IMG/VR virus record: IMGVR_UViG_3300017991_000001
Coordinates: 147,085-211,084 of that record
DNA length: 64,000 bases
Direction: 5' to 3' (one strand)
Positions 7,357 through 34,854 of this stretch are shown here, in pieces. How positions within the stretch are numbered: position 1 is the stretch's first letter; each line of letters starts with the position of its first letter. The translations under genes were made by a program, and so were the position numbers. The notes below the pieces were generated by a model that saw only the letters and a list, made by a program, of their open reading frames with translations, was not told where the DNA came from and ran no database searches.

Positions 7357-7737
7357 ATGGACAAAAAGTGTGCAGCGTACCTGATCAAGGAGGCGACCCG
7401 GCCATACGCCCGGGGTAGCTCCGGGGGTCGAGTCATCCCCGTGCCAGGTATGCAGGAGGCCGTCGCTGCAGCCACCCGGCAGGGTATCGGCAGGAAGACG
7501 CCCCCTGCGGGCGGCGGAGGAGGAGGTGGCGGCTTTCTGGCCCCCTTCCGCCGGATGGGTTGGCGGCGGGGCTTGCGAGCGGCCGGCATCGGAGGCGGTA
7601 TCGGTGCCCTCCTTTGGGGCTTGGGCCATCTGTGGGCGAACAAGAATCGCCCCAGCGTGTCCGAGAACGTCACGCAAAACCTCAACGCGAGGATGCGTGG
7701 AGCTGGAGAAGAAGGCATTTACATGAAACCTCAGTAA
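7357..7737 (+). CDS. leader-bearing small basic glycine-zipper protein
   Basis: GGAGG RBS; N-terminus MDKKCAAYLIKEA; Gly run; AAGIGGGIGALLWGLG hydrophobic segment. Confidence 0.7.
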   Translation: MDKKCAAYLIKEATRPYARGSSGGRVIPVPGMQEAVAAATRQGIGRKTPPAGGGGGGGGFLAPFRRMGWRRGLRAAGIGGGIGALLWGLGHLWANKNRPSVSENVTQNLNARMRGAGEEGIYMKPQ

Positions 7738-7803
7738 TTGGTGCGGGCAGCTGCCAAGAGCGCATCCCGCGAGACGTAAGGCCAATTGATAAGGAGACAG
7801 GCC

Positions 7804-8751
7804 GTGGCTAACCCAACTGCGAGCGAGCCGACCTCTCGGATGGTCAACGATGCATTCATCGATCAGTTGGCCAGCGGGAACGACCGGATCGTGAAGGAAG
7901 CCCAGGACGCGATCAACGATTACGTCCGGGTAAGGATGCGTGAAGATGGCTTCTGGCGGAGAATCCTCCCGCCGGTGACCATCACCAACGACGAGCTGGA
8001 TCGGCAGGTGGACACCGACAAGCCCGTCAAGGTGGTCGACAAGGAACCTGAGAGCCCTGCGGCGATCAGCGTGCCTTTTGCCTCGCTGCCCATGAACCGG
8101 TACATCCGCGGGCCCCGGTTCCGCGTGATGTTCGACCGCATCCTGACGCCCAAGTTCACGAAGGACGTGGACGAGCTCAGGACCTACGACATGGACATCC
8201 GGCAGATCCTGTCGGACAACTCCATCAAGGACATGCTGGCCGAAGAAGACGGCAAGGCGATTGCCACCGTCAACTTCCTGCTCCTCGGCGTCAACACGCC
8301 CCTGGCCGAGACGGGCGTCGCGCAGTGGGTTGCCATCTCCGGTGGCGTCACCCGCGACAACCTGGCTGAAGCCATGAAGGTGCTCCCCCGCACCCCGAAC
8401 CACCTGAACGTGGCCACGGTGTTGGTCAACAACGTCACCATCTGGGACGTTGTCAAGTTCGGGCGCGACGAGGTCGGTGGTGACCTGTCCCAGGACCTGT
8501 TCGAGAACGGGTTCGCGGAGCGGGAGCTGCTCGGCCGGCGCTGGATCGTCACGATCAAGCGGGACCTGGTGCCTGACAGCACCATCTTCCTGTTTGCCGC
8601 GCCGAAGTTCCTCGGCAAGTTCTTCGTGCTCGAGGACACGACGATGTACATTGATCGCCGTGCCTTCATGCTCGAGTTCTTCGCGTACGAGAGCATTGGC
8701 TCCTCGATCGCGAACGTGGCCGGCATCGGGCGTGTCGACTTCGAGCCCTAA
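7804..8751 (+). CDS. major capsid protein (probable HK97 fold)
   Basis: GTG at 7804 after AAGGAG; ~315 aa; VRVRMREDGFWRRILPP and C-terminal FFAYESIGSSIANVAGIGRVDF resemble large-phage capsid proteins; follows protease and scaffold; followed by a hairpin. Confidence 0.7.
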   Translation: MANPTASEPTSRMVNDAFIDQLASGNDRIVKEAQDAINDYVRVRMREDGFWRRILPPVTITNDELDRQVDTDKPVKVVDKEPESPAAISVPFASLPMNRYIRGPRFRVMFDRILTPKFTKDVDELRTYDMDIRQILSDNSIKDMLAEEDGKAIATVNFLLLGVNTPLAETGVAQWVAISGGVTRDNLAEAMKVLPRTPNHLNVATVLVNNVTIWDVVKFGRDEVGGDLSQDLFENGFAERELLGRRWIVTIKRDLVPDSTIFLFAAPKFLGKFFVLEDTTMYIDRRAFMLEFFAYESIGSSIANVAGIGRVDFEP

Positions 8752-8795
8752 GCTCGCGCCGTAGGTCTGTGTGTAGCAGGCTTGCACCCTAACCC

Positions 8796-8819
8796 GGGCG
8801 GTCGGTGATCCGGCCGCCC
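8796..8819 (+). terminator. GC-rich hairpin after the capsid gene (attenuator or stabilising stem, no U tract)
   Basis: GGGCGGTCGG-TGAT-CCGGCCGCCC inverted repeat. Confidence 0.4.
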
Positions 8820-8850
8820 CTATGCAAAACGAGCACTCGAGGAGAGTCCG

Positions 8851-9183: not shown

Positions 9184-9218
9184 GGATCGTTATCCTTCAC
9201 ACGCGGTGAGGTAATCCC

Positions 9219-9683: not shown

Positions 9684-9697
9684 GGAGTGAGGAGAAC

Positions 9698-9943: not shown

Positions 9944-9985
9944 CCGCCGCCCGGCGGCGGTTTGCCGCGATACGGCGAATGAACC

Positions 9986-10022
9986 GCCGCCCGGCTATGT
10001 GTACATGGCCGGGCGGCTTTTT
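9986..10022 (+). terminator. Rho-independent terminator ending the head operon
   Basis: GCCGCCCGGCTATG-TGTA-CATGGCCGGGCGGC stem followed by TTTTT; a second hairpin at 9942-9962 begins with the same 14 bp (AACCGCCGCCCGGC). Confidence 0.8.
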
Positions 10023-10043
10023 CATTAGGAGAGGGACGCACAG

Positions 10044-10969: not shown

Positions 10970-11572
10970 ATGGAAAAAGAAGCCGTCGGGCCCGTTGCCG
11001 GGGCCCTTGGAAAGGCCTGGGGCATCGGTAAGGTTCTGCTGGGTTTCGGGGACAAGATGCCGAAGTGGTTGTGGCCCCTCTTCGGCATCGCCGCGGCGTC
11101 ACCCGTCGTGGGCTACGCCCTTGAGAGCCGGCGCGAGAAGTCCAAGCGCACCGACGAGATCAGGCGCCGCATGAACGTGATGCGGCAGCTGCCGGGCGGG
11201 GAGGCGCTCCCGATGAACTTCGGGGAGACGCAGCCCCTGCAGGCCAAGCGAACGTCGGAGGAGGGGTACCTGCCCTTCCCGCTGCCCCCGAAGCAGGAGT
11301 CCATCCTGTCCAAGTTCGGGGAGGCGCGGGTCGTCGTGGCACGTTCGCTGGGACGGCCCGAGATCAAGGAGTCGGGGCTCAACGAGCTGGGGATCATGTT
11401 GCAGCAGGCCAAGAACAGGGCCAAGCAGAAGAGCCCGGCGAGCACGCTGAACGAGGGCGTGGACACCGAGCCGAAGGGCGAGAAGCCCGAAGAGAAGCGC
11501 GAGCAGCAGGGTGAGGCTAGGCCTGCAGCCGACTACGCCAGCGTGGGCGGCGGCATGGCGCACGGAGTGTGA
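10970..11572 (+). CDS. hypothetical protein (MEKEA start, amphipathic/hydrophobic N-segment)
   Basis: ATG 2 nt after the upstream TAG; K-x-A at residues 3-5. Confidence 0.7.
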   Translation: MEKEAVGPVAGALGKAWGIGKVLLGFGDKMPKWLWPLFGIAAASPVVGYALESRREKSKRTDEIRRRMNVMRQLPGGEALPMNFGETQPLQAKRTSEEGYLPFPLPPKQESILSKFGEARVVVARSLGRPEIKESGLNELGIMLQQAKNRAKQKSPASTLNEGVDTEPKGEKPEEKREQQGEARPAADYASVGGGMAHGV

Positions 11573-11573: not shown

Positions 11574-12710
11574 ATGAATCACCGGGCTTACTTGTTTAAG
11601 GAAGCAGCCAAGTGGTCTCGCCGCTTGATGGGTATGCTACGTTCTGCGACCCCCAAGAGGCGTAAACGCTTACTTAATCAATTCTACGAAGGTCATCTTC
11701 CTGAAAAGGGAATGGTGAGTCGGTATGGCTTAGAGGACGATCTAAGGGAGATGCAAACGTATAGTAGAGCACTGGAAAGGGCCGAGGATGCTTCAGAAGC
11801 GATGTCAGGATTGAAACAGCGTATGATAGAAAGAAAGATCCCTGTTCCGAAAACTGCCCCCACTCCAAAGGGCTTTCGTGACTATGGGTATGGTATGTCA
11901 GGTGCACGCACCATCGCTTCCGACCTGACAGAAGTGTTCCCTAAAGCAAAGAGATCAAAGATAAAAGGCATTGTGAAAAGAAGTCCGGCCGCTTTGTACA
12001 AATACCTGGCAAGTCAAGTTAGCGCTTATCCAATGAGTCCTGAAAGACGGTGGGGTGCCAATAGTCTACTGGAAAAGTGGCTTGTGTCGGGCAAAGGGAA
12101 AGCATTCAAACCACGTCCACCGCATAAGTATATGAAGACGCATAAGACAAAAGGGGGCAAAGTTGTCACGGAGGAATATAAGAAAAAGCAACCCGAGTAT
12201 CAGCCCGAAGCACACGTCTGGAGAGGCTATGGTTCGGACCGTCCTCTGCTTGCTCGTACAAGCGATGTTTTTGTTTCACCACACCCGCAAGTGGCAACAA
12301 GTTTTGGTGACCTCGTGGCCCGCATCCCTTTATCCCGATACGGCAACGTAAAGTATAGCCCGGACGTGGGGCTGAAATTTGAAGGTGCTGTTTCCTCTGG
12401 GTATAAGTGGCGTAAGAAGCGCCTTGCAAAGATCAAAAAAAGAATGTTGAAGGGGAAAGGATACAAGAAGTTCATCTACCCCGGAATGAACGCTCCCCTT
12501 CGAGATTATGAAACCGTTTTACCGACAGTGGGACCAAAGGACATCGGGGAGCTGTACAGCAGCCATGACTACAAACTGCACCCGCTTCGTTTGAAACTGC
12601 CGAAAAGGATGCAGACTGCAGGCAAGCGGACAGTACCGGCTACTGGCGAGAATCTGCTTTCACATCCCGTTACGAAGTCATTGTCTGAATTTGTAACACC
12701 AATCATGTAG
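11574..12710 (+). CDS. leader-bearing, AT-richer basic protein with ADP-ribosyltransferase-like motifs
   Basis: Starts MNHRAYLFKEA; HVWRG ... VFVSPHPQVATSFG ... RDYETVL; codon usage differs visibly from the flanks. Confidence 0.55.
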   Translation: MNHRAYLFKEAAKWSRRLMGMLRSATPKRRKRLLNQFYEGHLPEKGMVSRYGLEDDLREMQTYSRALERAEDASEAMSGLKQRMIERKIPVPKTAPTPKGFRDYGYGMSGARTIASDLTEVFPKAKRSKIKGIVKRSPAALYKYLASQVSAYPMSPERRWGANSLLEKWLVSGKGKAFKPRPPHKYMKTHKTKGGKVVTEEYKKKQPEYQPEAHVWRGYGSDRPLLARTSDVFVSPHPQVATSFGDLVARIPLSRYGNVKYSPDVGLKFEGAVSSGYKWRKKRLAKIKKRMLKGKGYKKFIYPGMNAPLRDYETVLPTVGPKDIGELYSSHDYKLHPLRLKLPKRMQTAGKRTVPATGENLLSHPVTKSLSEFVTPIM

Positions 12711-17606: not shown

Positions 17607-18308
17607 ATGGATTACAGGGGATACCTGATCAAGCAGGCGGCAGCGGGGCTTGTTGGCGAACAGGCCCCCGCGCCCGCTTCATGGTTTCTCAACCCCGTGA
17701 ACAAGGGGGATCGGGTACGCAAGTTCCTGAAGAACAGGAAGATCCAAAAGAGTCTCCAGAAGGAGGCGATGGGGCTGCGGCGGGCGCAACGTTTGGCGCG
17801 CCTGATGCGCAGCGGAAAGTTCAGCAAGCGCCGGGAGGTGTTCAAGCAGAAGCACGGGATTGAGACGCGGCATCCCTACGAGACAGCGCTGCATGACGTC
17901 AGGCGCAGGCTGCTGCGCCGGCAGCCGGAGAAGGCTTTTGGGGTGTTGACGGACCCGGACGTGCGGGACACGCTAAAGTATGTGGCGCGCAAGGGGCGCA
18001 ACCCGCTGGAACACCTGGAGCGCATGGGCGCCACGTCGAAGGCGGAACTGTTGGGGTTGGGGTTCCCGCCTGGCGTGCGACCGCCTGTCGGGTTGGGCGT
18101 GTTCGACCCGCTGCACAAGATCAAGGGTCGGTACCGGGGCGGCCAGGCAGCCAGCCGACCCATGGGTGCCTTGCCTGGCAGCCGGGTGATCGGGGCGCGG
18201 GAGAGTGCGCTGCCCGCGATACAGTTCGCCAAGGTCAAGGCCAAGGTGAAGGCGCCCGGCGGCAAATGGAAGAAGCGCAAGATGCGGATCGAGGACATGC
18301 CTGCATAA
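17607..18308 (+). CDS. leader-bearing highly basic protein inserted between sheath and tube
   Basis: AAGGAG RBS; starts MDYRGYLIKQA; very K/R-rich. Confidence 0.75.
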   Translation: MDYRGYLIKQAAAGLVGEQAPAPASWFLNPVNKGDRVRKFLKNRKIQKSLQKEAMGLRRAQRLARLMRSGKFSKRREVFKQKHGIETRHPYETALHDVRRRLLRRQPEKAFGVLTDPDVRDTLKYVARKGRNPLEHLERMGATSKAELLGLGFPPGVRPPVGLGVFDPLHKIKGRYRGGQAASRPMGALPGSRVIGARESALPAIQFAKVKAKVKAPGGKWKKRKMRIEDMPA

Positions 18309-24111: not shown

Positions 24112-24112
24112 G

Positions 24113-25350: not shown

Positions 25351-26986
25351 AAACTTCTACCGCGTCGATGTGCAGGTGCGGGCCGAGATCGGCGGGCAAT
25401 CCGTGCCCGTGAACAGCGTCTCCGTGCGCTACTCGATCGACCGTATACCGGAAGCCGCTATTACCATACCAGTGGGCCGCTCAGCGCGCGGGGACGCCGT
25501 ACACGTGGGTGCGGGTGTTTTCGGCACGCTGCCTCCCTTTACGTCCATGCGTATCTACGCGCTTGCTGAGGCGACGCCCGCCGGTCGCGACGCTCCGCGA
25601 AAAGGAGGATTGCCGCAAGGGGAGTTCCTTCTGTTCGATGGGTACGTGTCCGCGCCGTCCATGCATCTCGATGTTTCAGGCGGCATGGGCAGTGCCACGC
25701 TCCGTGTACAAGGTTTTGGAAGGCTGGGCGGCTTGGCTGGAGCAACCACGCTGGGCGTGGGCGTGACCTTGAACAAGCCTCCGGGCGGTACGGACGTGTT
25801 TATGAGTAGTTTTGGTCAGAACGAGAAGAACAACCACCTGACGATTACTGACCAGCTCATGAAGAAGGGGTATTACAGAGACATCGGTGAAGCCGTTTTG
25901 GAACTGTTTGACGACGCGCTGAACGTGACCAGCGTTTGGGCCCACGATCAGCCGGGTTCGGCCAACGCTGGAGCTGCCGCGGACCGTGCCCACGCGAGTC
26001 TGGTGTCGGGCGCCAGCTTCGACCTGCTCAAGCGCGCGTCTCAGGTCAATCAGCAGGCGTTCGGACGCATGGTGGCGGAAACATTAGCGAATGTTTTCTG
26101 GGGCGTGTGGTCGGGCGTCGACAAAGCTGGAAACTTCTCGCCCAGCGCGGGCGGCGATTTGTGGGAAGTGATGCAGAAGCTCCAAGGCGTTTTCTACTTC
26201 CACGTCGTACCCACGGCGGCCACGGATTACATGGCGCCGATTACCCCCAACCTTGGCGGCGACCCGAACAACCTCTTCCCGGCCGGTGAATATTCCATCA
26301 TAGGCGGGGGTGAGGATTTCTTTGAAGGAGGGGGCGCCCGTTACATGTACGCCTATATCACACAGGTGGGTTTGGCGGCGTCGAGTTTCCAATCCTCTCC
26401 GTGGAATGACGGTTCGTCGGTAACCGGGCGCGTAGGGTACGCGAACTTGTCGTTGGGCGATGAAGACTTCGTGTTGGACGGTGGGCGCATCTTCATGTGC
26501 GGTTCACCGCCGTGGCTCATACCTGCCGGTTCACAAGCCAAGGACACACTGAATCCGTTCAAGGGCATCAGCGACGCGGCAGGTTCCGGCGGTTGGTTTA
26601 GCAGTGGCAAGCGGGCGTCGGAAATCGCCATGTTCGGTTCAACGCTGGGTGACCGTGTCGCCAGAACCATCCTGCATGAGCTGGTCTTTGAGCACCGTAA
26701 GCTTGCCGTTGCCGGCCGCCTGCGCACGGACGTGGCACCCGGCAACATCGTACGAGTTACGCTGCCCGCGGAAGGGTTCATCGGTCAACCCGGTGACAAC
26801 CTGTATGGGATGGCAAGCGATGTTATCCTGAGGATTATGACTCAGGAAGGCGGCAGTTTGGCGCGAACGGAGGTGGGCATTTCGCACCTGCGCACCGAAA
26901 GCGAGCACGAACGCCTCACGTTGGACGAACACCCCGTATACGGGGAGACTTGGTCGGGCGTGCCGTTAGTCGTGGAGGAGAGCTGA
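25334..26986 (+). CDS. putative baseplate hub protein (gp27/gpD-like)
   Basis: VSVRYSIDRIPEAAITI, LLFDGYV and C-terminal GRLRTDVAPGNIVRV patterns typical of hub proteins. Confidence 0.55.
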   Translation: MAIRLENFYRVDVQVRAEIGGQSVPVNSVSVRYSIDRIPEAAITIPVGRSARGDAVHVGAGVFGTLPPFTSMRIYALAEATPAGRDAPRKGGLPQGEFLLFDGYVSAPSMHLDVSGGMGSATLRVQGFGRLGGLAGATTLGVGVTLNKPPGGTDVFMSSFGQNEKNNHLTITDQLMKKGYYRDIGEAVLELFDDALNVTSVWAHDQPGSANAGAAADRAHASLVSGASFDLLKRASQVNQQAFGRMVAETLANVFWGVWSGVDKAGNFSPSAGGDLWEVMQKLQGVFYFHVVPTAATDYMAPITPNLGGDPNNLFPAGEYSIIGGGEDFFEGGGARYMYAYITQVGLAASSFQSSPWNDGSSVTGRVGYANLSLGDEDFVLDGGRIFMCGSPPWLIPAGSQAKDTLNPFKGISDAAGSGGWFSSGKRASEIAMFGSTLGDRVARTILHELVFEHRKLAVAGRLRTDVAPGNIVRVTLPAEGFIGQPGDNLYGMASDVILRIMTQEGGSLARTEVGISHLRTESEHERLTLDEHPVYGETWSGVPLVVEES

Positions 26987-27684
26987 TGGACAAGGAATAT
27001 GAGATCTGGAAGGGCAAGCCCAGCGACGCGAACTTCGACGCGGTGCTGAAGAAGGCCGACCCCGTCATCAACTCGGCGCTGCAGTCTTACGCTGGCGGGG
27101 ACAAAGGGCTGCATTCCAGGGCGAAACTGCTGGCCGCGCGGGCGATCAAGAGCTACGACGCGACCAAGGGGACCAAGCTGCGCACCCACCTGATGACCCA
27201 GCTGCAGCCGCTCTCCCGTACGCACCGCGAGCGCACCCAGGTCGTGCGCGTGCCCGAGCGCGTCACCGCGGACCTCTACAAGATGAGGCAGGAGGAACAG
27301 CGCTTCAAGGATCAGTTCGGCCGCTCGGCCTCCGACAGCGAGCTGTCCTCGGCGACGGGCCTCTCCCGCAAGCGGCTCATGCATGTGCGCAAGTTCGCCC
27401 GGGGAGAGATGGCCGAGTCGGGCCTGGTGGGGGACGAGGGCGAGATCCTGTACCCCGGCGTGTCCAAGCCGGACCCCGAGCAGGTGCTGATCGAGTACGT
27501 CCACCACGACCTGGACCCGATCGACCAGACCATCCTGGAGCATCGCTCCGGCCTGTACGGGAAGCCCGTTTTGAGCAACAATGATATCGCGGCGCGGTTA
27601 AGATTATCGCCGGGCGCCGTATCGCAGCGGGCGGCGAAGATCGCCAAGCGGATCAGCGAGTTGCGTGACCAGGGGGTCGCCTGA
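26986..27684 (+). CDS. sigma-70 family RNA polymerase sigma factor (phage-encoded, group-3-like)
   Basis: Region 2 AIKSYDATKGTKLRTH, VVRVPE, region 3 GRSASDSELSSATGLS, region 4 HTH LSNNDIAARLRLSPGAVSQ; GGAGGAG RBS. Confidence 0.85.
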   Translation: MDKEYEIWKGKPSDANFDAVLKKADPVINSALQSYAGGDKGLHSRAKLLAARAIKSYDATKGTKLRTHLMTQLQPLSRTHRERTQVVRVPERVTADLYKMRQEEQRFKDQFGRSASDSELSSATGLSRKRLMHVRKFARGEMAESGLVGDEGEILYPGVSKPDPEQVLIEYVHHDLDPIDQTILEHRSGLYGKPVLSNNDIAARLRLSPGAVSQRAAKIAKRISELRDQGVA

Positions 27685-28121
27685 TGGCCATCGACAACCA
27701 GTTCGAGGACCTCGTCAACGCCCTGATCAGCGCGCAGAGCGCGGTGTCCGACGGCACGCGGGACGGCGGCCAGCGCAGGTGGATGGACTACCTGGAGATC
27801 AAGGAGGCCGGCCAGTTCGATCTCGATGCCATCGCGGAGATCTTCTCACGGGCCGGCTTGAACGACACCTTCAGCAAGCTGATGGGCACGGACGGGGCGC
27901 GCGTGAAGGAGTTCCACGCGTCCAAGCTGTCCAACGACTTCATGGCCGGGATGGAGCGCGACCACGTGGCCCGCGTGCGCTCACGCGTCGCCACGATCAT
28001 GCACGGCGCCTCCCGGTCCCGGGCGAACGGCAAGTCCACGGGCCCGCTGCGGCGCAACACCATTGACTTCATCACCCGCGTGGTGGACGAGGATGACGCC
28101 ACGGCCAGGGCGGAGAGCTGA
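27684..28121 (+). CDS. hypothetical protein
   Basis: TGATG coupling; codon bias. Confidence 0.7.
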   Translation: MAIDNQFEDLVNALISAQSAVSDGTRDGGQRRWMDYLEIKEAGQFDLDAIAEIFSRAGLNDTFSKLMGTDGARVKEFHASKLSNDFMAGMERDHVARVRSRVATIMHGASRSRANGKSTGPLRRNTIDFITRVVDEDDATARAES

Positions 28122-28123
28122 GC

Positions 28124-28594
28124 ATGGCCAGCACGAACTACACGGGACGGACGGTGGACCTGTTCATCTTCCAGGGGGCGCTGCCCGCCGGGGAGCAGCT
28201 GATCGAGACGGGCTTCGGCACTGCGGGCGAGGTCATCACCGGCATCCAGAAACTCGTGCAGTCGTTCACGACACTGTTCCTGACACGCATCGGCACCGTG
28301 AAGTACAACGCCTCGCTGGGCTCGGGTTTCATCGCGGCCATCCAACGCGGGCGCATCCGCGACGAGTCGGGCGCGCGCACGGAGTTCGCGCTGGCCGCCG
28401 AGGACGTGCGCAAGATTCTGGCCGAAGATGCGGAGGCCAACAACCCGCCGGACGACGAGACGTATGCGGGCGCGGACCTGGAGAGTCTTGAATTAAACAG
28501 GGCTGAATCGTTGCTCGTGTTGAAGGTTCGCGTAAACTCCGTAGCGGGCGAGAGTCGTGAAGTTTTCCTCCCCGTGCCCCTGGCGATCAGGTAA
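28124..28594 (+). CDS. baseplate wedge protein (gp25/gpW-like)
   Basis: ITGIQKLVQSFTTLFLTRIGT...LGSGF pattern; 156 aa; precedes a baseplate J-like gene. Confidence 0.7.
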   Translation: MASTNYTGRTVDLFIFQGALPAGEQLIETGFGTAGEVITGIQKLVQSFTTLFLTRIGTVKYNASLGSGFIAAIQRGRIRDESGARTEFALAAEDVRKILAEDAEANNPPDDETYAGADLESLELNRAESLLVLKVRVNSVAGESREVFLPVPLAIR

Positions 28595-28606
28595 AACGAT
28601 CGCGCG

Positions 28607-28619
28607 GGCGCGTTACCAT
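28607..28619 (+). promoter_or_regulatory. candidate promoter motif GGCGCGTTACCAT
   Basis: Near-identical copy (GGCGCGTTACTAT) at 52417-52429; both are intergenic and upstream of accessory genes. Confidence 0.4.
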
Positions 28620-28663
28620 CTCCTAAGGCCGGCTTCATAGCCCCCGGCCGGAAAGGAGACACG

Positions 28664-28933
28664 ATGGGAGAGAAAGAAAAGGACCCCTTGTGGTACAGGG
28701 TGTTCCTGAAACTGGCCATACTCGCGGCCATCGCGGCGTTCCTGTACGGTTTCGTGGACGGATGGGTGTCCGCACGGGCCGAACGGCGTGAGAAGGTCAT
28801 GGAGAGGATCAGGGAGGAGAACGAGCTGCGGCGCATGGAGTCCGAGCTGATGCGTCCACGCATGGGGCAGCTTCCACCCCCGCCTCCGCCCGCGTCCCCT
28901 CCGCCCGACAAGAAGGATCAGTGGATCTTCTAG
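28664..28933 (+). CDS. small membrane protein with a Pro-rich tail (moron-like)
   Basis: AAGGAG RBS; one TM segment (VFLKLAILAAIAAFLYGFV); flanked by a candidate promoter and a hairpin. Confidence 0.7.
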   Translation: MGEKEKDPLWYRVFLKLAILAAIAAFLYGFVDGWVSARAERREKVMERIREENELRRMESELMRPRMGQLPPPPPPASPPPDKKDQWIF

Positions 28934-28952
28934 GCCCGAGAGGGCTGGGCCC

Positions 28953-28978
28953 GGAAGGGCGCCCCCGGGCGCTTTTCC
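28953..28978 (+). terminator. hairpin after the small membrane gene
   Basis: GGAAGGGCGCCC-CC-GGGCGCTTTTCC inverted repeat. Confidence 0.45.
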
Positions 28979-28997
28979 ATAGCTATCAGGCAGAGCC

Positions 28998-30647
28998 ATG
29001 TCCAGCGACTTGACAATCAACGACCTCGATTCGGACGACGTCCAACAGGCGGAAGGCTTCCTGGTGGACTTCCTGGCCACGGAGTACCCGAGCCTGGACC
29101 TGACGGCCGGCAAGGTTCTGCGTGATCTTCTGATCCGCCCGAACGCGATCTTCCACTCGCTCAACCAGGAGGACATCGACCGGCTGCGCAGGTCCATGAG
29201 CCTAAAAGCCATCGAGGAGGACCCCACCCTGGCCGACGACGACATCGTCGACGGGGTGCTCTCCAACTACCGCGTGGAGCGCGGCGAGGGCACCAAGGCC
29301 GAGGGGCAGGTCACCATCATCGTCGCCACGTTCACGACGACCACCGTCAGCGTGGGCACGGTCTTCACGGCCAACGGCGTCAACTTCGTCACCACCCAGA
29401 CCTACAGCGGCGTGACGACGGCCGACGCCGTGGTCTCGGACCAGCAGAAGGAGATCCAGCCCAGGAGCGACGGCACGTACGGTTTCACGATCCCCGTGGA
29501 GGCCGAGGAGGTGGGCGCCGTGGAGGTGCGGCGCAGCACGCGCTTCGCCGTGGTGCCCGAACCGGCGGGCCTGGTGGACGCCGTCGCGGCGGAGGACTTC
29601 TCGGGCGGCTCGGACACCGAGACCAACTCGGAGCTGATCGAGCGGTTCAAACTGGGGATCTCCCCGTCCACGTTCGCCGGCCGCGTGCACATCCAGTCGC
29701 TGCTGCGGGAGGAGGTCCCGAACCTGCAGGCCAGTTCCATCACCGGCTTCGGCGACCCCGAGATGCTGCGGGACCGCCACAACATCTTCGCCGTGTCGCA
29801 GGGCGGCAAGGCCGACATCTGGGCCCGGACGGGCACGCTGCCCACCACCCGCACGCTGACCAAGACGGCCACCCTGATCGACGCGGACAGCAAGACGTGG
29901 CAGGTTTCGATCCTGCGGGACGACGCGCCGGGCTTCTACACCGTGCCGTTCATCCTCCCGGAAGGGGCCGGCACGGACGAGAACACCTTTGAGATCACCG
30001 CGGAGACGCGGGGGATGGACCTGACCGCCGAGACGGGGGCGTTCGTGCCGGACGTGGACGACCTCGTCGAGGGCGGCTACTCGCGGTACCAGACGGCGGT
30101 GCTGCAGTTCGTCGACCCGGACACGGACACCTCGGGCCTGACCGAGCACGAGTCCACCCAGACGGTCCAGGTGGGCGTGCTGGCGTTGCCCGACATCGAC
30201 ACGCTGCAGGCCCTGTCCAACGACCGGGACCGCCGCAACCCGCAGGCCGACTACCTGGTCAAGGCGCCGGTGCCGGCCTTCGTGGCGATCACGCTGACGG
30301 TCCAGTACAAGACCGACACCGAGGCGCCGGACGCCGACGCGATCAAGGAGTCGATCGCCGGCCGGGTCAACGACCTGGGCTTCGAGGTGGGCAAGCTGCC
30401 CTCCAGCATGGTCTACGACGCCGTACACAATGCCACTTCCGAGCTGGACGCGCTGGTGGTCGCGCCCATCGACATGTTCTGCCAGATCCGCAGGCCCGAC
30501 GGGACCGTCGTCTCCATCCGCGACGGGAACGAGATCAGGATTCCCGACGAGCCGGAGCTGGGCGTGACCTCCCGCACGACGATGTTCTACGTGGACGTGA
30601 GCGACATTGACGTGACCGTCGAACCGCTGCCGGTGCTGCCGGCGTGA
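28998..30647 (+). CDS. baseplate J/gp6-like wedge protein
   Basis: GKVLRDLLIRP, RGEGTKAEGQVTI, FSGGSDTETNSELIER and GGKADIW motifs. Confidence 0.8.
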   Translation: MSSDLTINDLDSDDVQQAEGFLVDFLATEYPSLDLTAGKVLRDLLIRPNAIFHSLNQEDIDRLRRSMSLKAIEEDPTLADDDIVDGVLSNYRVERGEGTKAEGQVTIIVATFTTTTVSVGTVFTANGVNFVTTQTYSGVTTADAVVSDQQKEIQPRSDGTYGFTIPVEAEEVGAVEVRRSTRFAVVPEPAGLVDAVAAEDFSGGSDTETNSELIERFKLGISPSTFAGRVHIQSLLREEVPNLQASSITGFGDPEMLRDRHNIFAVSQGGKADIWARTGTLPTTRTLTKTATLIDADSKTWQVSILRDDAPGFYTVPFILPEGAGTDENTFEITAETRGMDLTAETGAFVPDVDDLVEGGYSRYQTAVLQFVDPDTDTSGLTEHESTQTVQVGVLALPDIDTLQALSNDRDRRNPQADYLVKAPVPAFVAITLTVQYKTDTEAPDADAIKESIAGRVNDLGFEVGKLPSSMVYDAVHNATSELDALVVAPIDMFCQIRRPDGTVVSIRDGNEIRIPDEPELGVTSRTTMFYVDVSDIDVTVEPLPVLPA

Positions 30648-30654
30648 GGATGCC

Positions 30655-31464
30655 ATGAACGCGAAAGCTTATCTCATCAAGCAGGCCGTCGAACCCATCG
30701 AGCTCCTCATGGGCGGCGGCACGTTGGGAGGTGGCTACCTGGCCGGCGAGTTGGCCGACGCGGGCGCGAACACGATGCTGAGCGACGTGGTGGCCCGTCA
30801 GATCGAGCGGTCCGCCGGCAAGATGTCGCCCAAGGAGCGGCGTGCCATACAAAAGGGCATTGGCGGGGTGAAGAAGGTACCCGTGCATGTCGTGGGCCCG
30901 AAAAAGCTTCACCACGGCAGCGAATACTTCGCGGCCGTGCCCGGCAAAAAGGGTATCGGCGAGGTGGTGATAACGAAACGCACGCCCGACTTCGTGTTGG
31001 CCCACGAGTTGGGGCACGCGAAGGTAAAGCCTACGTTCTTCAGCAAACGGATGTCGCGGTTGGAAGGATTATCCGAACGCCACGGCAAGATGTTGGGCGG
31101 CGGGGCCGGCGCGCTGTGGGCGGCACTCAGTGCCGACCCGGAAGAGAGCGCGCTGCGCACGGGCGTGGAAAGCGGCCTCAAGGGCGCGCTGACCGGCGTG
31201 GCGTCGCACGCGCCCATCCTCGCACACGAGGGGGCCGCATCGTTCCATGGCCTGCGCGGCATGGCTCGCGCGGGTGTGCCGTGGCGCAGCATGGCCCGTT
31301 CGGTACCCGGACTGGCCGCCCTGTTCGGCACGTACCTGGCTTCGGCCGCCCTACCTTCGGCGGGTGTCGCGGCCGGCGCGGGCCTGATCGCGCGCGAGGT
31401 CAAGAAGCGGCAGCTCAAGAGGGAGCTGCGCAAGGCTCGGCGGGAGGGCAAGCTTGGACGCTAA
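30655..31464 (+). CDS. leader-bearing HExxH zinc metallopeptidase-like membrane protein
   Basis: MNAKAYLIKQA; VLAHELGHA; downstream HEGAAS; Gly-rich hydrophobic helices. Confidence 0.7.
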   Translation: MNAKAYLIKQAVEPIELLMGGGTLGGGYLAGELADAGANTMLSDVVARQIERSAGKMSPKERRAIQKGIGGVKKVPVHVVGPKKLHHGSEYFAAVPGKKGIGEVVITKRTPDFVLAHELGHAKVKPTFFSKRMSRLEGLSERHGKMLGGGAGALWAALSADPEESALRTGVESGLKGALTGVASHAPILAHEGAASFHGLRGMARAGVPWRSMARSVPGLAALFGTYLASAALPSAGVAAGAGLIAREVKKRQLKRELRKARREGKLGR

Positions 31465-32086
31465 AGCCTACCTGATCAAGCAGGCCACGACGGTCGGTCG
31501 CCTGGCACGCATCGCCAAGCGGCATGGCATACCACTGGTCGGCGACTGGCGCTACGCGGCCAAGCTGCTGGGTCGGCAGGCCACGCCCAAGGGCAAGGCG
31601 CATTACCGGCGCGCGGCCGGCCTGATCGAGCCGGGCGAACGAAAGATCCTGCGCCGCCTACAGGCGAAGACCAAGGACCCCTTGGCAGAGCTCGGCGTGC
31701 AGCGCCTGCCGGGGGAGCGCCGGCTCGGGGTCATGGGAGATCGTACCGGCTTGGAGGTGACTGAGGGTGCCGTGCGTACGGTTCATACACACCCGGAAGC
31801 AGTGGAAAAGGTATTGGGGGTGGACCTTCCGCCTTTCAGGAGGAACCGGCTGGGGCAGGTGTTCCCCTCGAGCGGGCTGGACTACCGTTACAAGAAGTTC
31901 ATGCCCAAGACGATTAGGGAAGCCATAGCGGACCTAAAGAAGGGACCCTACTTCTTCAAGCACGACCTGGGTGATCTGGAAGATAACTTAGGACTGACCC
32001 ACGCCATCCTGGACCCGAGCACGGGCGTGCAGTCGGTGATAAAAGGTGGTCGGGGTAAGCTGAGAAGGCTGTTCTTCAAGGAGTGA
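31454..32086 (+). CDS. leader-bearing basic protein with a JAB/MPN-like motif
   Basis: TTG start with GGAGG; MDAKAYLIKQA; VHTHP...FPSSGLD...HAIL. Confidence 0.6.
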   Translation: MDAKAYLIKQATTVGRLARIAKRHGIPLVGDWRYAAKLLGRQATPKGKAHYRRAAGLIEPGERKILRRLQAKTKDPLAELGVQRLPGERRLGVMGDRTGLEVTEGAVRTVHTHPEAVEKVLGVDLPPFRRNRLGQVFPSSGLDYRYKKFMPKTIREAIADLKKGPYFFKHDLGDLEDNLGLTHAILDPSTGVQSVIKGGRGKLRRLFFKE

Positions 32087-32088
32087 TG

Positions 32089-32853
32089 ATGAACCCGCGC
32101 GCGTACCTCTTGAAGAGGGCCAAGGACCTGGACGCGGATCTGTCCACGGCGGGCCAGCTCATGACCGGAAACGTGCTGGGTGGCATAGGGGGAGGCTTGG
32201 CTGCCGCCGGTTCAACAGGTCTCCTGGCAAAGGTGCTCATGCCGGGGCTGGGCAGCCTGGCCGGGCCCGTTTCTTCATCGGAGCGCAAGCAGCTTCAAAA
32301 GGCCATGGGCGTCAAGAAGGTGCCCGTGAAGACGCTCAACCCTTTCAAGATGCCCGTGGAAGGGGAGCACTTCGACCCACAAGCAGGCAAGCGTGGAAAG
32401 GTGGTGATCTCCAAACGTTCGCCGGATTACATCCTGGCGCACGAGCTGGGCCACGCGCAGGACCCCGCCTGGACCAGCCCGAGGATGATGAGGGTTTACG
32501 ACATCGCAAGGGATGTAGGAATTCCATTGGGCAGTCTGGCCGGTTCCATCTGGGCCGCGCACGGCGCGGACCCGGAGGATAGCGTAGCCCGCACGGCAGT
32601 CGAGAGCGCGTTGAAAGGTGCCGCAGGTGGAACGGTCGGGTTCTCGCCCGTACTCGCCAGAGAGACGGTGGCATCCTTGCGGGGTTTCCAGGGGATGTAC
32701 AACGCGGGCATGCCTTGGCATAGGATACTCCGGTCAGCGCCCGGTTTGGCAGTGGGCATCCTCACATACATAGCCACGGGGGCGCTACCCGCTGCCGGCG
32801 CGGCAGTGGGTACGGGCCTTGCCGCCAGAGAGCTGAAGAAAGAGGAAGACTAG
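32089..32853 (+). CDS. leader-bearing HExxH metallopeptidase-like protein (paralogue of 30655)
   Basis: MNPRAYLLKRA; GVKKVPV, ILAHELGHA, ADPEDS..RTAVES.LKGA and G.PW..I.RS.PGLA shared with the 30655 protein. Confidence 0.75.
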   Translation: MNPRAYLLKRAKDLDADLSTAGQLMTGNVLGGIGGGLAAAGSTGLLAKVLMPGLGSLAGPVSSSERKQLQKAMGVKKVPVKTLNPFKMPVEGEHFDPQAGKRGKVVISKRSPDYILAHELGHAQDPAWTSPRMMRVYDIARDVGIPLGSLAGSIWAAHGADPEDSVARTAVESALKGAAGGTVGFSPVLARETVASLRGFQGMYNAGMPWHRILRSAPGLAVGILTYIATGALPAAGAAVGTGLAARELKKEED

Positions 32854-34478
32854 TGTCTGAGCTGCCGGGATACCCGGAGAACGACCTCAACAACGGACGT
32901 GACCTGCTGGTCATGCTGGGCAGCTTCTGGTCCGAGCTGTTCGGTGACCGGGACATCCTGCAAACCCACCTGCAATCCTCCGCCCACGAGCAGGCCCAGA
33001 CGCACCTGAACTATCTCGAGGCCGTGGCCAACGTTTCCCGCTTCACCATCCCGGTCTTCCACCGCGAGGACTGGCACCTGCTGACCTTCAAGCAGAGCGA
33101 GGCCAACGCGACGGCGAGCACGTACCGGGAAGGCGACCTGGTCTACGGGGAGCAGCCCGGCACGGTGGCGGGACGCGACGCCGGCTTCGTGCAGACCTAC
33201 GGCGGCACGGACCGCCCGGACCAGACGCGGGTGGTGCTGCCCGAGACCCTGGTCGACGCGCCCGTGACCCTCCAGAACCTGGTCATCGACCCCAGCCGCG
33301 TGTTGCTCAAGGACCTGGACTACGACATCGAGGAGCGCTACGGGAGCCGCGTGATGCGCTTCCGCGCCGACCCCTTCACGGACGACCTGATCCCGCGGCG
33401 CGACGTGGTGGATGACGACGGCAACGTGGTGGACGTGGAGATCGCCCTGTGGATCTACGTCGGCGAGTTCGACCTGGAGTACGTCTACACCCAGTTCGGG
33501 TACGCCATCGGTCTGCAGCTGCCGTCCACCGAGTTCTACAAGCAGCTCCTCAACGCCATCTGGGACTCGCACGTGCTGGGCTTCTCAAGGGCCGGTATGG
33601 AGAGCTTCCTGTCCGCCGTGTCGGGCGCGCCGATCATACTGGGCGCGCGGGAGACGGTGGAGGTGATCCGCGACGAGGGTGACTCGACCCTGGTCGTGAC
33701 CGATGCCAACGTTTATCGCGTGCCGGCTGGTGGCAACGTACTGTTGTCGGTGGGAACCACCTACCTGGCCGGTACGACGGTATCGGACATCTTCCAGATC
33801 AGGGAGCTGTCGGGTCACAGCCCGAGCTACGACCTGCTACCGGCCATGGCGTTCAGCAAGAGCCTGCTCAGCGGGCAGTTCATCTCCGAGCTGTTCATGG
33901 AGGACAAGCTCGCCGAGCTGTCGTACGAGGGGCTCGACGAGGACGGCAAGGCCATCGTGACCTTCGAGGTGTCCGGCTTCCCCAGCGACGTGGAAGCGTT
34001 CTGGGATGCGGTGCACGAGCGCGGCAAGGCGGATGGGCAGACGCTGGCCAACCTGCTAGACACGCGGGAGAATCCGGTGGGCGAGCCCGGCGAGAGTGAC
34101 CTGCCGTCCACGGTGAACCCGCTGGAGTTCATGCTGGATAACCTGTTGAAGAACAACCTCTTCCTGCTGCGCGTGAAGCCCGGGGCGTTCGATCCCGACG
34201 CTCCCGGCTTGAGCCTGTTCAGCCGGCTGCGCGAGATCATGCCGCCGCACACGACGTATATCGTGTTCATTGAGGTGACACCTGACGCGGAGAGCGTTGA
34301 CTTATCTCAGGCTGGCGGAGAAGATGAACCTGGTGCGGAGGTTAGCGCCGGTATGTTCCACGGGTCAGGGCTGCTGCTGGACGAGCTGTACGAGGGTACA
34401 TCGGCTCCCGCAGGCGACGTGTTGACATACGATGAGGCGGTCGTGGCCGCGCGCCACGTTTCGTTCACCTGTCAATGA
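32853..34478 (+). CDS. putative baseplate wedge protein (gp7/gpI-like)
   Basis: MLGSFWSELF N-terminus, LREIMPPHTTYI C-terminal motif; follows baseplate J once the inserts are discounted. Confidence 0.6.
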   Translation: MSELPGYPENDLNNGRDLLVMLGSFWSELFGDRDILQTHLQSSAHEQAQTHLNYLEAVANVSRFTIPVFHREDWHLLTFKQSEANATASTYREGDLVYGEQPGTVAGRDAGFVQTYGGTDRPDQTRVVLPETLVDAPVTLQNLVIDPSRVLLKDLDYDIEERYGSRVMRFRADPFTDDLIPRRDVVDDDGNVVDVEIALWIYVGEFDLEYVYTQFGYAIGLQLPSTEFYKQLLNAIWDSHVLGFSRAGMESFLSAVSGAPIILGARETVEVIRDEGDSTLVVTDANVYRVPAGGNVLLSVGTTYLAGTTVSDIFQIRELSGHSPSYDLLPAMAFSKSLLSGQFISELFMEDKLAELSYEGLDEDGKAIVTFEVSGFPSDVEAFWDAVHERGKADGQTLANLLDTRENPVGEPGESDLPSTVNPLEFMLDNLLKNNLFLLRVKPGAFDPDAPGLSLFSRLREIMPPHTTYIVFIEVTPDAESVDLSQAGGEDEPGAEVSAGMFHGSGLLLDELYEGTSAPAGDVLTYDEAVVAARHVSFTCQ

Positions 34479-34485
34479 GGTGGCC

Positions 34486-34854
34486 ATGAATCATCGGGCT
34501 TTCCTGCTTAAAGAGGCTGTGCAGAAGCGGTCCTACAGTCTGCTTCTGGGCCCTGTCGGCGGTGGTGCCGTGGGGGGCACCATGGCCGCACGGAACATCG
34601 ATCCCGAGCACAAGGAACGCATCAAGAAGATCCTGTACGGCGTGATGTACGGCACCGGCGGCGGCCTGATAGGAGGGGTGGGCGGACAGCTGGCCGGCGG
34701 CGCGGTGGGCGGTTTCGGTGGCAAGCACATCGGCAGGTTGGGGGGTATGGGGAGAGTCGGCGGAGCGGCCGGCATGACCCTCGGGGCGCTGCTGGGGGCC
34801 TTCGGAGGCATGGCTGCGGGCGGGCGCCTGGGCGGCATTAAAGCATCGGAATAG
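34486..34854 (+). CDS. leader-bearing glycine-zipper protein
   Basis: GAGG RBS; MNHRAFLLKEA; repeated GxxxG hydrophobic helices. Confidence 0.75.
   Translation: MNHRAFLLKEAVQKRSYSLLLGPVGGGAVGGTMAARNIDPEHKERIKKILYGVMYGTGGGLIGGVGGQLAGGAVGGFGGKHIGRLGGMGRVGGAAGMTLGALLGAFGGMAAGGRLGGIKASE

What the first reader, a model, noticed from the sequence alone, without database searches (positions are those of the whole stretch)
7357..34854. Shared N-terminal leader on seven unrelated inserted genes: candidate virion-packaged effector system
Seen: seven ORFs start with nearly the same peptide: 7357 MDKKCAAYLIKEA, 11574 MNHRAYLFKEA, 17607 MDYRGYLIKQA, 30655 MNAKAYLIKQA, 31454 MDAKAYLIKQA, 32089 MNPRAYLLKRA, 34486 MNHRAFLLKEA (consensus M-[ND]-x-[RK]-[AG]-[YF]-L-[ILF]-K-[EQR]-A). 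After the final Ala the sequences diverge completely, except one paralogous pair. The leader DNA uses different synonymous codons, so conservation is at protein level. Each gene is wedged between core genes that are normally adjacent (decoration|capsid, neck|neck, sheath|tube, baseplate J|wedge, wedge|next). The cargo is basic while the structural proteins are acidic. Known precedent: T4 internal proteins carry a ~10-aa capsid-targeting sequence removed by the prohead protease and are ejected with the DNA. Inference: this leader is a capsid-targeting signal ending in a K-x-A cleavage site, loading a polymorphic set of enzymes and membrane-active proteins into the head for delivery at infection (host takeover or anti-defence).
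Basis: partly seen in the sequence, partly recalled or inferred. Interest (0 to 1): 0.95.

Follow-up and report, generated by a model that had tools for sequence, protein, structure and literature searches.

The report
Shared address tag on phage proteins
An uncultured 211-kb phage puts the same 11-residue N-terminal tag, ending in Lys-x-Ala, on at least eight otherwise unrelated basic proteins, and the same Lys-x-Ala motif marks its capsid, scaffold and head protease, so the tag most likely sends swappable cargo into the head, as in phage T4 but with unrelated sequences.

Summary
The peptide [YFW]-L-[ILFMV]-K-x-A occurs 7 times in the six-frame translation (0.16 expected). Every copy lies in the first 13 residues of a + strand ORF with a Shine-Dalgarno site. 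All seven proteins are basic and have no family hits. Conservation is at peptide level: codon-position identity is 0.81/0.96/0.42, and the tag persists in a relative with GC 0.44.

About 35 tagged genes were found in relatives, all in virion-module slots that differ between phages.

- K-x-A is the most over-represented of all 400 gapped dipeptides in head-module proteins (43 vs 16, z 7.4), but not in tail proteins.
- It is invariant near the capsid protein N-terminus, in the scaffold-like N-terminus, and in the linker after a domain with a prohead-protease fold.
- The scaffold-like protein's own N-terminus resembles the tag.

Packaging, cleavage and delivery are inferred, not shown. The metallopeptidase-like cargo is a conserved resident of its slot, not an insert. 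Sheath, tube and neck labels are unverified.

Verdict: a new variant of the T4 capsid-targeting/internal-protein principle. Confidence 0.55, interest about 0.68.

The parts
7357..7737 (+). Tagged gene 1, 126 aa. The tag MDKKCAAYLIKEA is at 7357-7395. pI 11.4, 21% Gly, with a weakly hydrophobic Gly-rich segment at residues 72-94.
   Evidence: No homolog in 15 relatives. The slot is empty in L003 and holds a different tagged gene in L004.
11574..12710 (+). Tagged gene 2, 378 aa. The tag MNHRAYLFKEA is at 11574-11606. pI 10.3. GC3 is 0.50 against mostly about 0.8-0.95 in its neighbours. Complete orphan.
17607..18308 (+). Tagged gene 3, 233 aa. The tag MDYRGYLIKQA is at 17607-17639. pI 11.3.
   Evidence: The slot is empty in L004, L011, L014 and L030. 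L003 carries a different tagged gene there.
30655..31464 (+). Tagged gene 4, 269 aa. The tag MNAKAYLIKQA is at 30655-30687. Has an HELGH motif plus a conserved downstream Glu, and Gly/Ala-rich weakly hydrophobic segments. Putative membrane-active Zn peptidase.
31454..32086 (+). Tagged gene 5, 210 aa, TTG start. The tag (M)DAKAYLIKQA is at 31454-31486. Has a conserved HTHP...PSSxxD motif. Soluble and basic.
32089..32853 (+). Tagged gene 6, 254 aa. The tag MNPRAYLLKRA is at 32089-32121. HELGH paralog of gene 4 (46% identity).
34486..34854 (+). Tagged gene 7, 122 aa. The tag MNHRAFLLKEA is at 34486-34518. 30% Gly, pI 10.5. An ortholog with the tag is present in L140.
3529..4989 (+). Prohead protease candidate. 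The protease-fold domain is at 3529-4236, with invariant H56, H117 and S169 and four invariant Cys. An invariant K-x-A at residues 238-240 (nt 4240-4248) lies in a low-confidence linker. A helical C-terminal domain follows.
5039..6310 (+). Putative scaffold, 423 aa, pI 4.2. Its N-terminus MAMMDTLLKQANDVEKEA resembles the tag and holds two K-x-A (nt 5081-5089 and 5102-5110). It has 13 K-x-A against 5.5 expected.
   Evidence: The name scaffold is inferred from position and composition.
7786..8751 (+). Major capsid protein, 321 aa. Its only K-x-A is at residues 37-39 (IVKEA|QDAINDY, nt 7894-7902) and is invariant in relatives. Cleavage there would leave a 282-residue mature protein.
908..2368 (+). 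Head-module protein, 486 aa, with 12 K-x-A against 3.4 expected (z 5.1). Candidate core or scaffold component.
55652..57055 (-). Minus-strand ORF of about 467 aa with the strongest K-x-A excess (17 against 4.5-4.8 expected, z 6.2-6.3). Possible further head-internal protein.
1..140 (+). 3' end of an 820-aa portal-like ORF that starts upstream of the window. It has 13 K-x-A against 4.6 expected. Two more tagged genes lie further upstream (L153:6622-6834 and L153:6831-7613).

Best explanation
The 11-13 residue N-terminal peptide, consensus M-[NDG]-x(2-5)-[YF]-L-[ILVFM]-K-x-[AS], is most likely a prohead-targeting tag. [quoted passage not shown]

Proposed mechanism:
1. The tagged genes sit in the late virion operon and are made together with head and tail proteins (shown from gene layout: same strand, tight spacing).
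2. The tag resembles the N-terminus of the phage's own scaffold-like protein, a short hydrophobic stretch followed by K-x-A. It would therefore co-assemble the cargo into the scaffold core of the procapsid (inferred).
3. The prohead protease encoded at 3529-4989 cuts at or next to K-x-A. The same motif marks the capsid protein N-terminus, the scaffold-like protein, other head-module proteins and the protease's own linker. The cut would free the mature basic cargo inside the head (inferred from motif statistics and conservation).
4. The cargo stays with the DNA and leaves with it at infection (inferred by analogy only).

The cargo set is modular. It includes two HExxH metallopeptidase-like proteins with weakly hydrophobic Gly/Ala-rich segments, an HTHP...PSSxxD protein, two small Gly-rich proteins and basic orphans. 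Cassettes appear, disappear and change slots between related phages. What the cargo does in the host is unknown. Envelope or membrane action and DNA charge neutralisation are as likely as anti-defence.
For: - Tag statistics and N-terminal position.
- Peptide-level selection: codon-position identity 0.81/0.96/0.42, and the tag is kept in L140 (GC 0.44).
- About 35 tagged genes in relatives, on at least three protein families plus orphans.
- Three collection-wide DNA-pattern scans hit the 211-kb source contig only inside the virion module.
- K-x-A ranks 1 of 400 gapped dipeptides in head-module proteins (43 vs 16, z 7.4) and 273 of 400 in tail and baseplate proteins.
- The capsid protein has a single K-x-A, invariant in about 78 relatives.
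- 42 of 43 scaffold-like N-termini carry K-x-A (77 vs 25.7 +/- 4.8).
- K-x-A is invariant in the low-pLDDT linker after the protease domain in 16 of 16 members.
- Protease fold: the best PDB hit in both searches is T4 gp21. Many BFVD 'prohead protease' models match at E 1e-6 to 1e-3. tblastn reaches an annotated capsid maturation protease.
- The scaffold-like N-terminus DTLLKQA (window) and TFIKEA (L005) resemble the tag.
- Cargo is basic while most neighbours are acidic.
- Cultured relative Salmonella phage Arash shows the same head-restricted K-x-A excess, and its capsid protein has GLVKEA at residues 24-29.
[quoted passage not shown] Giant-phage head proteins lose N-terminal propeptides at a three-residue motif (PMC10052503).
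Against: - There are no proteomic, cleavage or packaging data for this uncultured phage.
- K-x-A carries little information. Its excess could partly reflect Lys/Ala-rich helices.
- The residue after the tag (T, A, V, K) does not match the S/A/E preference seen after K-x-A in head proteins.
- Most tagged genes lie among tail and baseplate genes. The HExxH gene is a conserved resident next to Baseplate_J, which would also fit a tail or baseplate role.
- Four of the seven have Gly/Ala-rich weakly hydrophobic segments that could instead mean host-membrane proteins.
- Arash shares the K-x-A signature but showed no such tag in the two virion-module stretches examined, about half of its genome. Its published coverage values do not settle cleavage.
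Confidence: 0.55

Rival explanations
1. The tag directs proteins to the tail, baseplate or tail-tube lumen rather than the head. This would resemble N-terminal loading signals of contractile injection system payloads, or a docking strand for the baseplate.
For: Six of the seven tagged genes in the window sit among presumed neck, tail and baseplate genes. The HExxH gene is conserved directly after Baseplate_J in L140, L142, L143 and L144. Other tagged genes in relatives sit between baseplate or fibre-region genes.
Against: Tagged genes also occur in the head module (L004:5269, L004:9481, L005, L153). The tag ends in the motif that is enriched only in head-module proteins and resembles the scaffold-like N-terminus. 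The same cargo family occupies different slots in different phages, so position is not tied to a structural neighbour. The tag is 11 residues, not the roughly 50-residue disordered signal recalled for such payloads (own knowledge).
Confidence: 0.12
2. The tag is a host-cell localisation signal, for membrane or envelope targeting or a signal-anchor-release-like start. The proteins would then be late non-virion proteins such as lysis, superinfection-exclusion or envelope-remodelling factors.
For: Four of the seven have Gly/Ala-rich weakly hydrophobic segments with KD19 of 1.0-1.6. The HExxH family is weakly similar to PF04298, whose members are, from own knowledge, membrane peptidases. The tag has a basic residue before a hydrophobic triplet.
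Against: g11574 and g31454 have no hydrophobic segment, and g17607 has only one marginal Pro/Gly-rich stretch (KD19 1.08). There is no twin arginine, no h-region directly after the tag in g30655 (acidic residues at 13, 16, 32 and 35), and no lipobox. This reading does not explain the K-x-A link to capsid, scaffold and protease.
Confidence: 0.1
3. The conserved start is a nucleic-acid or translational feature: a shared ribosome-loading or regulatory element, or a homology hook that lets cassettes recombine into new slots. It would not be a functional peptide.
For: Cassettes do move between slots. All copies have a similar Shine-Dalgarno context.
Against: Third codon positions are only 0.42 identical against 0.81 and 0.96 at positions 1 and 2. 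The peptide is kept across relatives with GC from 0.44 to 0.65 using different codons. Upstream DNA is not conserved.
Confidence: 0.06
4. The tag is a leader removed by the phage's own HExxH peptidase, which would be a dedicated leader peptidase encoded among the cargo. It would be independent of the prohead protease.
For: HExxH proteins with the tag are the most widespread tagged family and are conserved in several relatives.
Against: L238 has tagged genes but no HExxH gene in its Baseplate_J slot or anywhere in the 21-kb stretch examined. The K-x-A excess is in head proteins and reaches Arash, which gave no match to the HExxH protein. The peptidase carries the tag itself.
Confidence: 0.05

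Closest known systems
Phage T4 capsid targeting sequence and internal proteins (IPI, IPII, IPIII, Alt), processed by prohead protease gp21
   Same: A conserved N-terminal peptide of about 10 residues sits on otherwise unrelated, basic, highly polymorphic proteins. The peptide ends in the short motif that the head protease uses on capsid, scaffold and core proteins. A protease of the gp21/assemblin fold is encoded in the head module.
   Different: There is no sequence similarity to the T4 tag or cargo. The motif is K-x-A rather than the hydrophobic-x-Glu site of T4 (own knowledge). There are at least 8-9 cargo genes per genome, spread through head, tail and baseplate gene slots rather than a few loci. 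Cargo includes HExxH proteins with membrane-like segments. Packaging and ejection are unproven here.
Giant phage (phiKZ, 201phi2-1, SPN3US) head-protein propeptides cut by a gp21-like protease
   Same: A jumbo phage with many head-associated proteins. N-terminal propeptides are removed at a three-residue motif that also recurs many times in scaffold-like proteins, and the protease cuts itself C-terminal to its catalytic domain (PMC10052503).
   Different: In those phages the propeptides are 20-254 residues long and, as far as I recall, are not a common short tag (lengths; the rest is own knowledge). The motif there ends in Glu. This clade is unrelated at sequence level apart from the protease fold.
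Phage P1 Dar antirestriction proteins packaged into the head
   Same: Accessory, non-structural proteins are loaded into the capsid during morphogenesis for use at the next infection. The P1 virion paper in the library mentions capsid targeting sequences (PMC9024508, listed; details from own knowledge).
   Different: From own knowledge, no short shared cleavable N-terminal tag across all cargo is known there. Loading depends on an ordered protein hierarchy.
N-terminal extension shared by capsid and scaffold proteins of some Firmicutes phages and ribosomal protein L27, removed by the host Prp protease (own knowledge)
   Same: A short shared N-terminal leader on several phage proteins, removed by one protease, with mature proteins starting at or next to Ala.
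   Different: That leader sits on the main structural proteins, not on accessory cargo. It ends in Phe-Phe|Ala and is cut by a host cysteine protease. Here the motif differs, and a phage serine-protease-fold enzyme is the candidate.
PF04298 Zn_peptidase_2 (putative neutral zinc metallopeptidases), for cargo g30655 and g32089 only
   Same: An HExxH motif with a conserved downstream Glu and hydrophobic C-terminal segments. One tagged homolog (P0003) has a weak precomputed PF04298 hit.
   Different: The window proteins do not reach any Pfam threshold. They carry the phage tag and sit in a baseplate gene cluster.

Membership tests
T4-type capsid-targeting / internal-protein system | A short (about 10 aa) conserved N-terminal peptide shared by otherwise unrelated proteins of one phage | tested here: met
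   Seven copies in the window plus 1-2 upstream. Cargo is unrelated except for one paralog pair.
T4-type capsid-targeting / internal-protein system | The peptide ends in the cleavage motif that the prohead protease also uses on capsid, scaffold and core proteins | tested here: inconclusive
   The sequence signature fits. K-x-A ranks 1 of 400 in head-module proteins only and is invariant in the capsid protein, the scaffold-like N-terminus and the protease linker. Actual cleavage could not be tested.
T4-type capsid-targeting / internal-protein system | A prohead protease of the gp21/assemblin fold encoded with the head genes | tested here: met
   The domain model has pLDDT 78.5. T4 gp21 is the top PDB hit, and many BFVD prohead-protease models match at E down to about 3e-6. 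tblastn reaches an annotated capsid maturation protease.
T4-type capsid-targeting / internal-protein system | Cargo is physically inside the capsid and is ejected with the DNA | not testable with these tools
   The phage is uncultured and no virion proteome exists for it.
T4-type capsid-targeting / internal-protein system | Cargo genes are basic and hypervariable between close relatives | tested here: met
   pI 9.7-11.4. Three cargo genes have no homolog in 15 syntenic relatives, and slots are filled, empty or differently filled.
T4-type capsid-targeting / internal-protein system | Sequence homology to the T4 tag or internal proteins | tested here: not met
   No PHROG, Pfam, NCBIfam or PDB sequence hits for any cargo. 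This is therefore an analogue, not a member.
Twin-arginine (Tat) signal peptide | An RR pair in S/T-R-R-x-F-L-K, followed by a 12-20 residue hydrophobic region and an A-x-A site | tested here: not met
   There is a single R or K. Two of the seven have no hydrophobic stretch and a third only a marginal one far from the N-terminus. Acidic residues follow the tag in g30655.
Contractile-injection-system payload signal (tail-lumen loading) | A disordered N-terminal signal of about 50 residues, with payload genes clustered after the structural operon (own knowledge) | tested here: not met
   The tag is 11-13 residues with a sharp end. The genes are interspersed in head, tail and baseplate slots. A loading ATPase was not searched for.
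PF04298 Zn_peptidase_2 (g30655, g32089) | HExxH zinc site plus a match to the family model above the gathering score | tested here: inconclusive
   HELGH and a downstream Glu are invariant in the alignment. There is no Pfam hit for the window proteins and only a weak hit for homolog P0003.

The most novel reading that the evidence does not exclude
A widespread clade of uncultured jumbo phages may use one portable 11-residue address tag, cut at K-x-A by the head protease, to load a freely exchangeable arsenal into the capsid and inject it at the start of infection. The arsenal would include membrane-active metallopeptidases, a JAB-like enzyme and Gly-rich pore-like proteins. Cassettes would hop between any intergenic slot of the virion operon. 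This would be an independent and much more modular reinvention of the T4 internal-protein system. It would also be a ready-made tag for packaging foreign proteins.
Probability: 0.3. Interest if true: 0.85.

Novelty: new variant of a known kind. Interest (0 to 1): 0.68.

Why it matters
If the tag works as proposed, it gives a sequence rule for picking out virion-delivered proteins in an uncultured jumbo-phage clade. Most of those genes have no annotation, so the rule would point directly at candidates for host takeover, envelope penetration or counter-defence.

It would also predict the specificity of a prohead protease (K-x-A) from sequence statistics alone. That approach could be reused for other phages.

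It would show that the T4 solution of a short cleavable capsid-targeting peptide arose independently, and here in a more modular form.

A short portable packaging tag also has practical use for loading proteins into phage capsids.

The K-x-A part can be tested now in a cultured relative, Salmonella phage Arash, for which virion mass-spectrometry data already exist.

Tried and rejected
- Family and structure-sequence searches on all seven cargo proteins (PHROGs, Pfam, NCBIfam, PDB sequences) gave nothing usable.
- Most flanking proteins also have no family hit, so 'sheath', 'tube', 'neck' and 'decoration' could not be confirmed.
- Megablast of 12 kb against cultured phages found nothing. tblastn of the HExxH cargo against cultured phages found nothing.
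- PDB sequence-profile searches for 908-2368 and 3529-4989 gave nothing. Pfam on 16 protease homologs gave nothing relevant.
- Single-protein locus searches with 32853-34478 and Baseplate_J returned almost only the source contig.
- 'MRERYLIKDA' upstream of the window (L001:892) was rejected as a tag. It is internal to the 820-aa portal-like ORF.
- Low-GC, short-ORF hits from the pattern scans were rejected as chance. The MNSYEYLLKSA family (L101, L106, L111) and L098 were left unassigned, because those stretches share no protein with the window.
- A Tat or Sec signal reading was rejected. A DNA-level element was rejected on codon-position identity.
- Arash was checked for a comparable tag family in two virion-module stretches (about half of its genome), and none was seen.
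- Distant relatives of the clade showed no YLIK-type tag within 20 kb of the capsid gene.

Full report
**What the window is.** The window is the last 64 kb of a 211-kb IMG/VR contig, IMGVR_UViG_3300017991_000001. It has GC of about 0.64, and window position 1 corresponds to roughly contig position 147,085. The capsid protein places it in a large clade of uncultured phages of about 150-235 kb. The nearest cultured relatives are distant: Salmonella phage Arash and three Vibrio phages, at 31% capsid identity. Few genes have family hits. Those that do are the major capsid protein at 7786-8751 (weak PHROG hit), Baseplate_J at 28998-30647, a sigma/HTH-like protein at 26950-27684, and glycosyltransferases and collagen-like proteins further on.

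- The seven ORFs and their N-termini are as described.
- The peptide [YFW]L[ILFMV]K.A has exactly seven matches in the six-frame translation, against 0.16 expected from composition. All lie within the first 13 residues of + strand ORFs.
- The DNA form gave 5 matches and none in 100 shuffles.
- Each start has a GGAG/GAGG site 5-10 nt upstream. An in-frame stop lies a few codons upstream of five starts and 18-20 codons upstream of the other two.
- The seven proteins have pI 9.7-11.4, while most neighbouring structural proteins have pI 4.2-5.6. Their GC3 is lower, and 11574-12710 is only 0.50.
- Apart from the paralogs 30655 and 32089 (46% identity), they match each other only in the tag or in Gly-rich low-complexity stretches.
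- None has a Pfam, PHROG, NCBIfam or PDB sequence hit.

**The tag is selected as a peptide and is older than this phage.**
- Across 18 copies from the window and relatives, core codons are 0.81, 0.96 and 0.42 identical at positions 1, 2 and 3.
- A close relative, L140, has core proteins 62-85% identical to the window but GC 0.44. It still carries three tagged genes: MNSRMYLIKQS, MGYKAYLIKQS and MGYKSYLFKMA.
- Tagged genes also occur in the phages of L003, L004 and L005 and in L141-L144 and L238.
- They occur among database homologs of two cargo families. Thirteen of the 153 protein sequences held at that point, nearly all from the HExxH search, carry the tag, and so do all four homologs of the 31454 family.
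- In all I counted about 35 tagged genes. The consensus is M-[NDG]-x(2-5)-[YF]-L-[ILVFM]-K-x-[AS]. Conservation stops sharply after the last residue.
- The same phage has at least one more tagged gene (MDAKAYLIKQAL, 70 aa, pI 11) and one variant (MNRLNPQLIKLA, 260 aa). Both lie just upstream of the window, before an 820-aa portal-like ORF.

**Where the genes sit.**
- Synteny with 15 relatives shows that 7357, 11574 and 17607 have no homolog anywhere, although the flanking genes are conserved and collinear.
- The slot before the capsid gene is empty in L003 and holds an unrelated tagged gene in L004. The slot after the 935-aa protein is empty in L004, L011, L014 and L030 and holds an unrelated tagged gene in L003.
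- Other relatives have tagged genes in slots that are closed in the window:
  - between the sigma-like gene and its neighbour (L109);
  - between the 34859 and 35466 homologs (L119, L144, L238);
  - between the 37356 and 38282 homologs (L142, L238);
  - between the 2381 and 3529 homologs (L004).
- The 31454 family sits in the Baseplate_J slot here but in the 37356|38282 slot in L238.
- The HExxH gene, however, is a conserved resident directly after Baseplate_J in L140, L142, L143 and L144. The window has it duplicated with 31454 between the copies. It is absent from that slot in L085 and L238.
- So 'inserted between normally adjacent genes' is right for most of these genes but not all.
- Three DNA-pattern scans of the whole viral collection were not biased by location. 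They hit the source contig only within the virion module. Those patterns cover only four of the seven known forms, so this is suggestive rather than complete.

**The link to head maturation (new here).**
- The putative scaffold (5039-6310, pI 4.2) begins MAMMDTLLKQANDVEKEA, which is tag-like with two K-x-A.
- Its homologs are otherwise very divergent. Forty-two of 43 distinct N-termini have one or two K-x-A at residues 18-32 after an amphipathic stretch: 77 occurrences against 25.7 +/- 4.8 in shuffles.
- The capsid protein has a single K-x-A at residues 37-39, invariant in about 78 relatives. Cutting there would leave 282 residues.
- ORF 3529-4989 has an N-terminal domain with invariant His and Ser residues and four invariant Cys.
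  - Its AlphaFold model (pLDDT 78.5) has T4 gp21 as best PDB hit (E 0.07).
  - It matches many BFVD models named prohead protease at E 3e-6 to 1e-3.
  - tblastn reaches Arash gp222, phage G gp19 and an annotated capsid maturation protease of a Gordonia phage.
- Directly after this domain, in a low-confidence linker, K-x-A is present in all 16 aligned members. This fits self-cleavage.
- Of all 400 X.Y patterns, K.A is the most over-represented in the head-module proteins 908, 3529, 5039, 6360 and 8851 (43 against 16, z 7.4). The same holds for the minus-strand ORF 55652-57055 (17 against 4.8). In 19 tail and baseplate proteins it ranks 273rd (15 against 17.1).
- Cultured phage Arash shows the same pattern. 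Head-module gp220, gp223, gp225 and gp222 are enriched, its tail proteins mostly are not, and its capsid protein has GLVKEA at residues 24-29.
- This is how a prohead-protease site behaves in T4 and in phiKZ-like phages, where a three-residue motif recurs in scaffold and core proteins and at the ends of N-terminal propeptides.

**Interpretation.** The best reading is a capsid-targeting tag that imitates the scaffold-like N-terminus and is removed at K-x-A by the head protease. It would load a modular set of basic proteins into the head.
- Shown: the tag, its peptide-level selection, its spread and mobility, the head-specific K-x-A signature, and the protease fold.
- Inferred: binding to the scaffold core, cleavage, retention in the head, ejection, and any role in the host.

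The cargo comprises:
- two HExxH proteins with an invariant downstream Glu, distant PF04298 similarity and a family of more than 1000 database relatives;
- a family with conserved HTHP...PSSxxD, which I note as JAB/MPN-like from memory only;
- two small proteins with 21-30% Gly;
- basic orphans.

The hydrophobic segments are weak (KD19 1.0-1.6). That fits proteins stored soluble and inserted into membranes later, but equally fits ordinary membrane proteins.

**Rivals.**
- A tail or baseplate loading signal is the main one, because of gene position. It does not explain the head-specific motif, the tagged genes in head slots, or the movement of one family between slots.
- A host-membrane or secretion signal fails for the cargo proteins that lack a clear hydrophobic segment, and it fails the Tat criteria.
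- A nucleic-acid element is contradicted by codon-position identity.
- A dedicated leader peptidase (the HExxH protein itself) is unlikely, because L238 has tags without that gene nearby.

**Comparison and novelty.** This works like the T4 capsid targeting sequence and internal-protein system, but it is not a member. There is no homology, the predicted site is different, there are more cargo genes, and they are scattered through the virion operon. I class it as a new variant of a known kind.

**Most useful next step.** Run a semi-specific re-search of the published Arash virion mass-spectrometry data for N-termini after K-x-A. Follow with protease and tag-reporter assays in E. coli.

Noticed in passing
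window 26950-27684: A sigma-factor/HTH-like protein (phrog_351, HTH_24) sits inside the baseplate gene cluster. Arash has a sigma factor (gp10) at what looks, from gene order, like the matching place, and it was reported in virions by mass spectrometry. It may be a packaged transcription factor.
   Followed up: partly
window 55652-57055 (minus strand): An ORF of about 467 aa has the strongest K-x-A excess in the window (17 against 4.5-4.8 expected, z 6.2-6.3). It lies far from the head module and on the opposite strand, with only a faint DUF6582 hit. It may be another head-internal protease substrate.
   Followed up: partly
L140 (Logan SRR32827935 contig) versus window 21444-37346: This collinear relative has 62-85% protein identity in core genes but GC 0.44 against 0.64 in the window. 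That is a very large base-composition shift between close relatives.
   Followed up: no
window 11574-12710: GC3 is 0.50 where neighbours mostly have about 0.8-0.95, and there is no homolog in 5.8 billion proteins except itself. It looks recently acquired, yet already carries the tag. Gene callers elsewhere start it at Met19, which hides the tag.
   Followed up: partly
window 10970-11572; L143:3295-4053; L144:6521-6838: A second, minimal shared start M-[EQ]-K-[EK]-A (MEKEAVGP, MQKKALLP, MQKEAFGP) occurs on basic or Gly-rich variable proteins in the same kinds of slots. It may be a stripped-down K-x-A leader.
   Followed up: no
P0004, P0007, P0008, P0010, P0011 (HExxH homologs): HExxH relatives without the YLIK tag begin with LFQKLLN...Y[KR]xAD. 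This resembles the scaffold-like N-terminus (SLFAQLNALAEEI...VKxA) of the more distant phages in the clade. It may be a second tag type.
   Followed up: no
L153:2-5950 (upstream of the window): A giant ORF of at least 1982 aa lies next to a 208-aa Lys-rich protein (pI 11) and the two extra tagged genes, all before the portal-like gene.
   Followed up: no
window 31454-32086 and P0155-P0158: Conserved VHTHP, then 20-30 residues, then FPSSxxD and a C-terminal G..SV.KG..G.L.RLYFR. This is reminiscent of a JAB/MPN metal site with an insertion.
   Followed up: no
window 47195-51206 and 59643-62120: A glycosyltransferase-methyltransferase fusion, a heptosyltransferase-like protein, and two collagen-repeat proteins lie downstream of the baseplate genes.
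   Followed up: no
L082 (Arash) 15469-16020, gp221: Arash gp221 starts MNHNEELLKGL and sits just before the protease gene. This is the same place as a tagged gene in L004. It may be a distant cognate of the tag, and it was detected in Arash virions.
   Followed up: no
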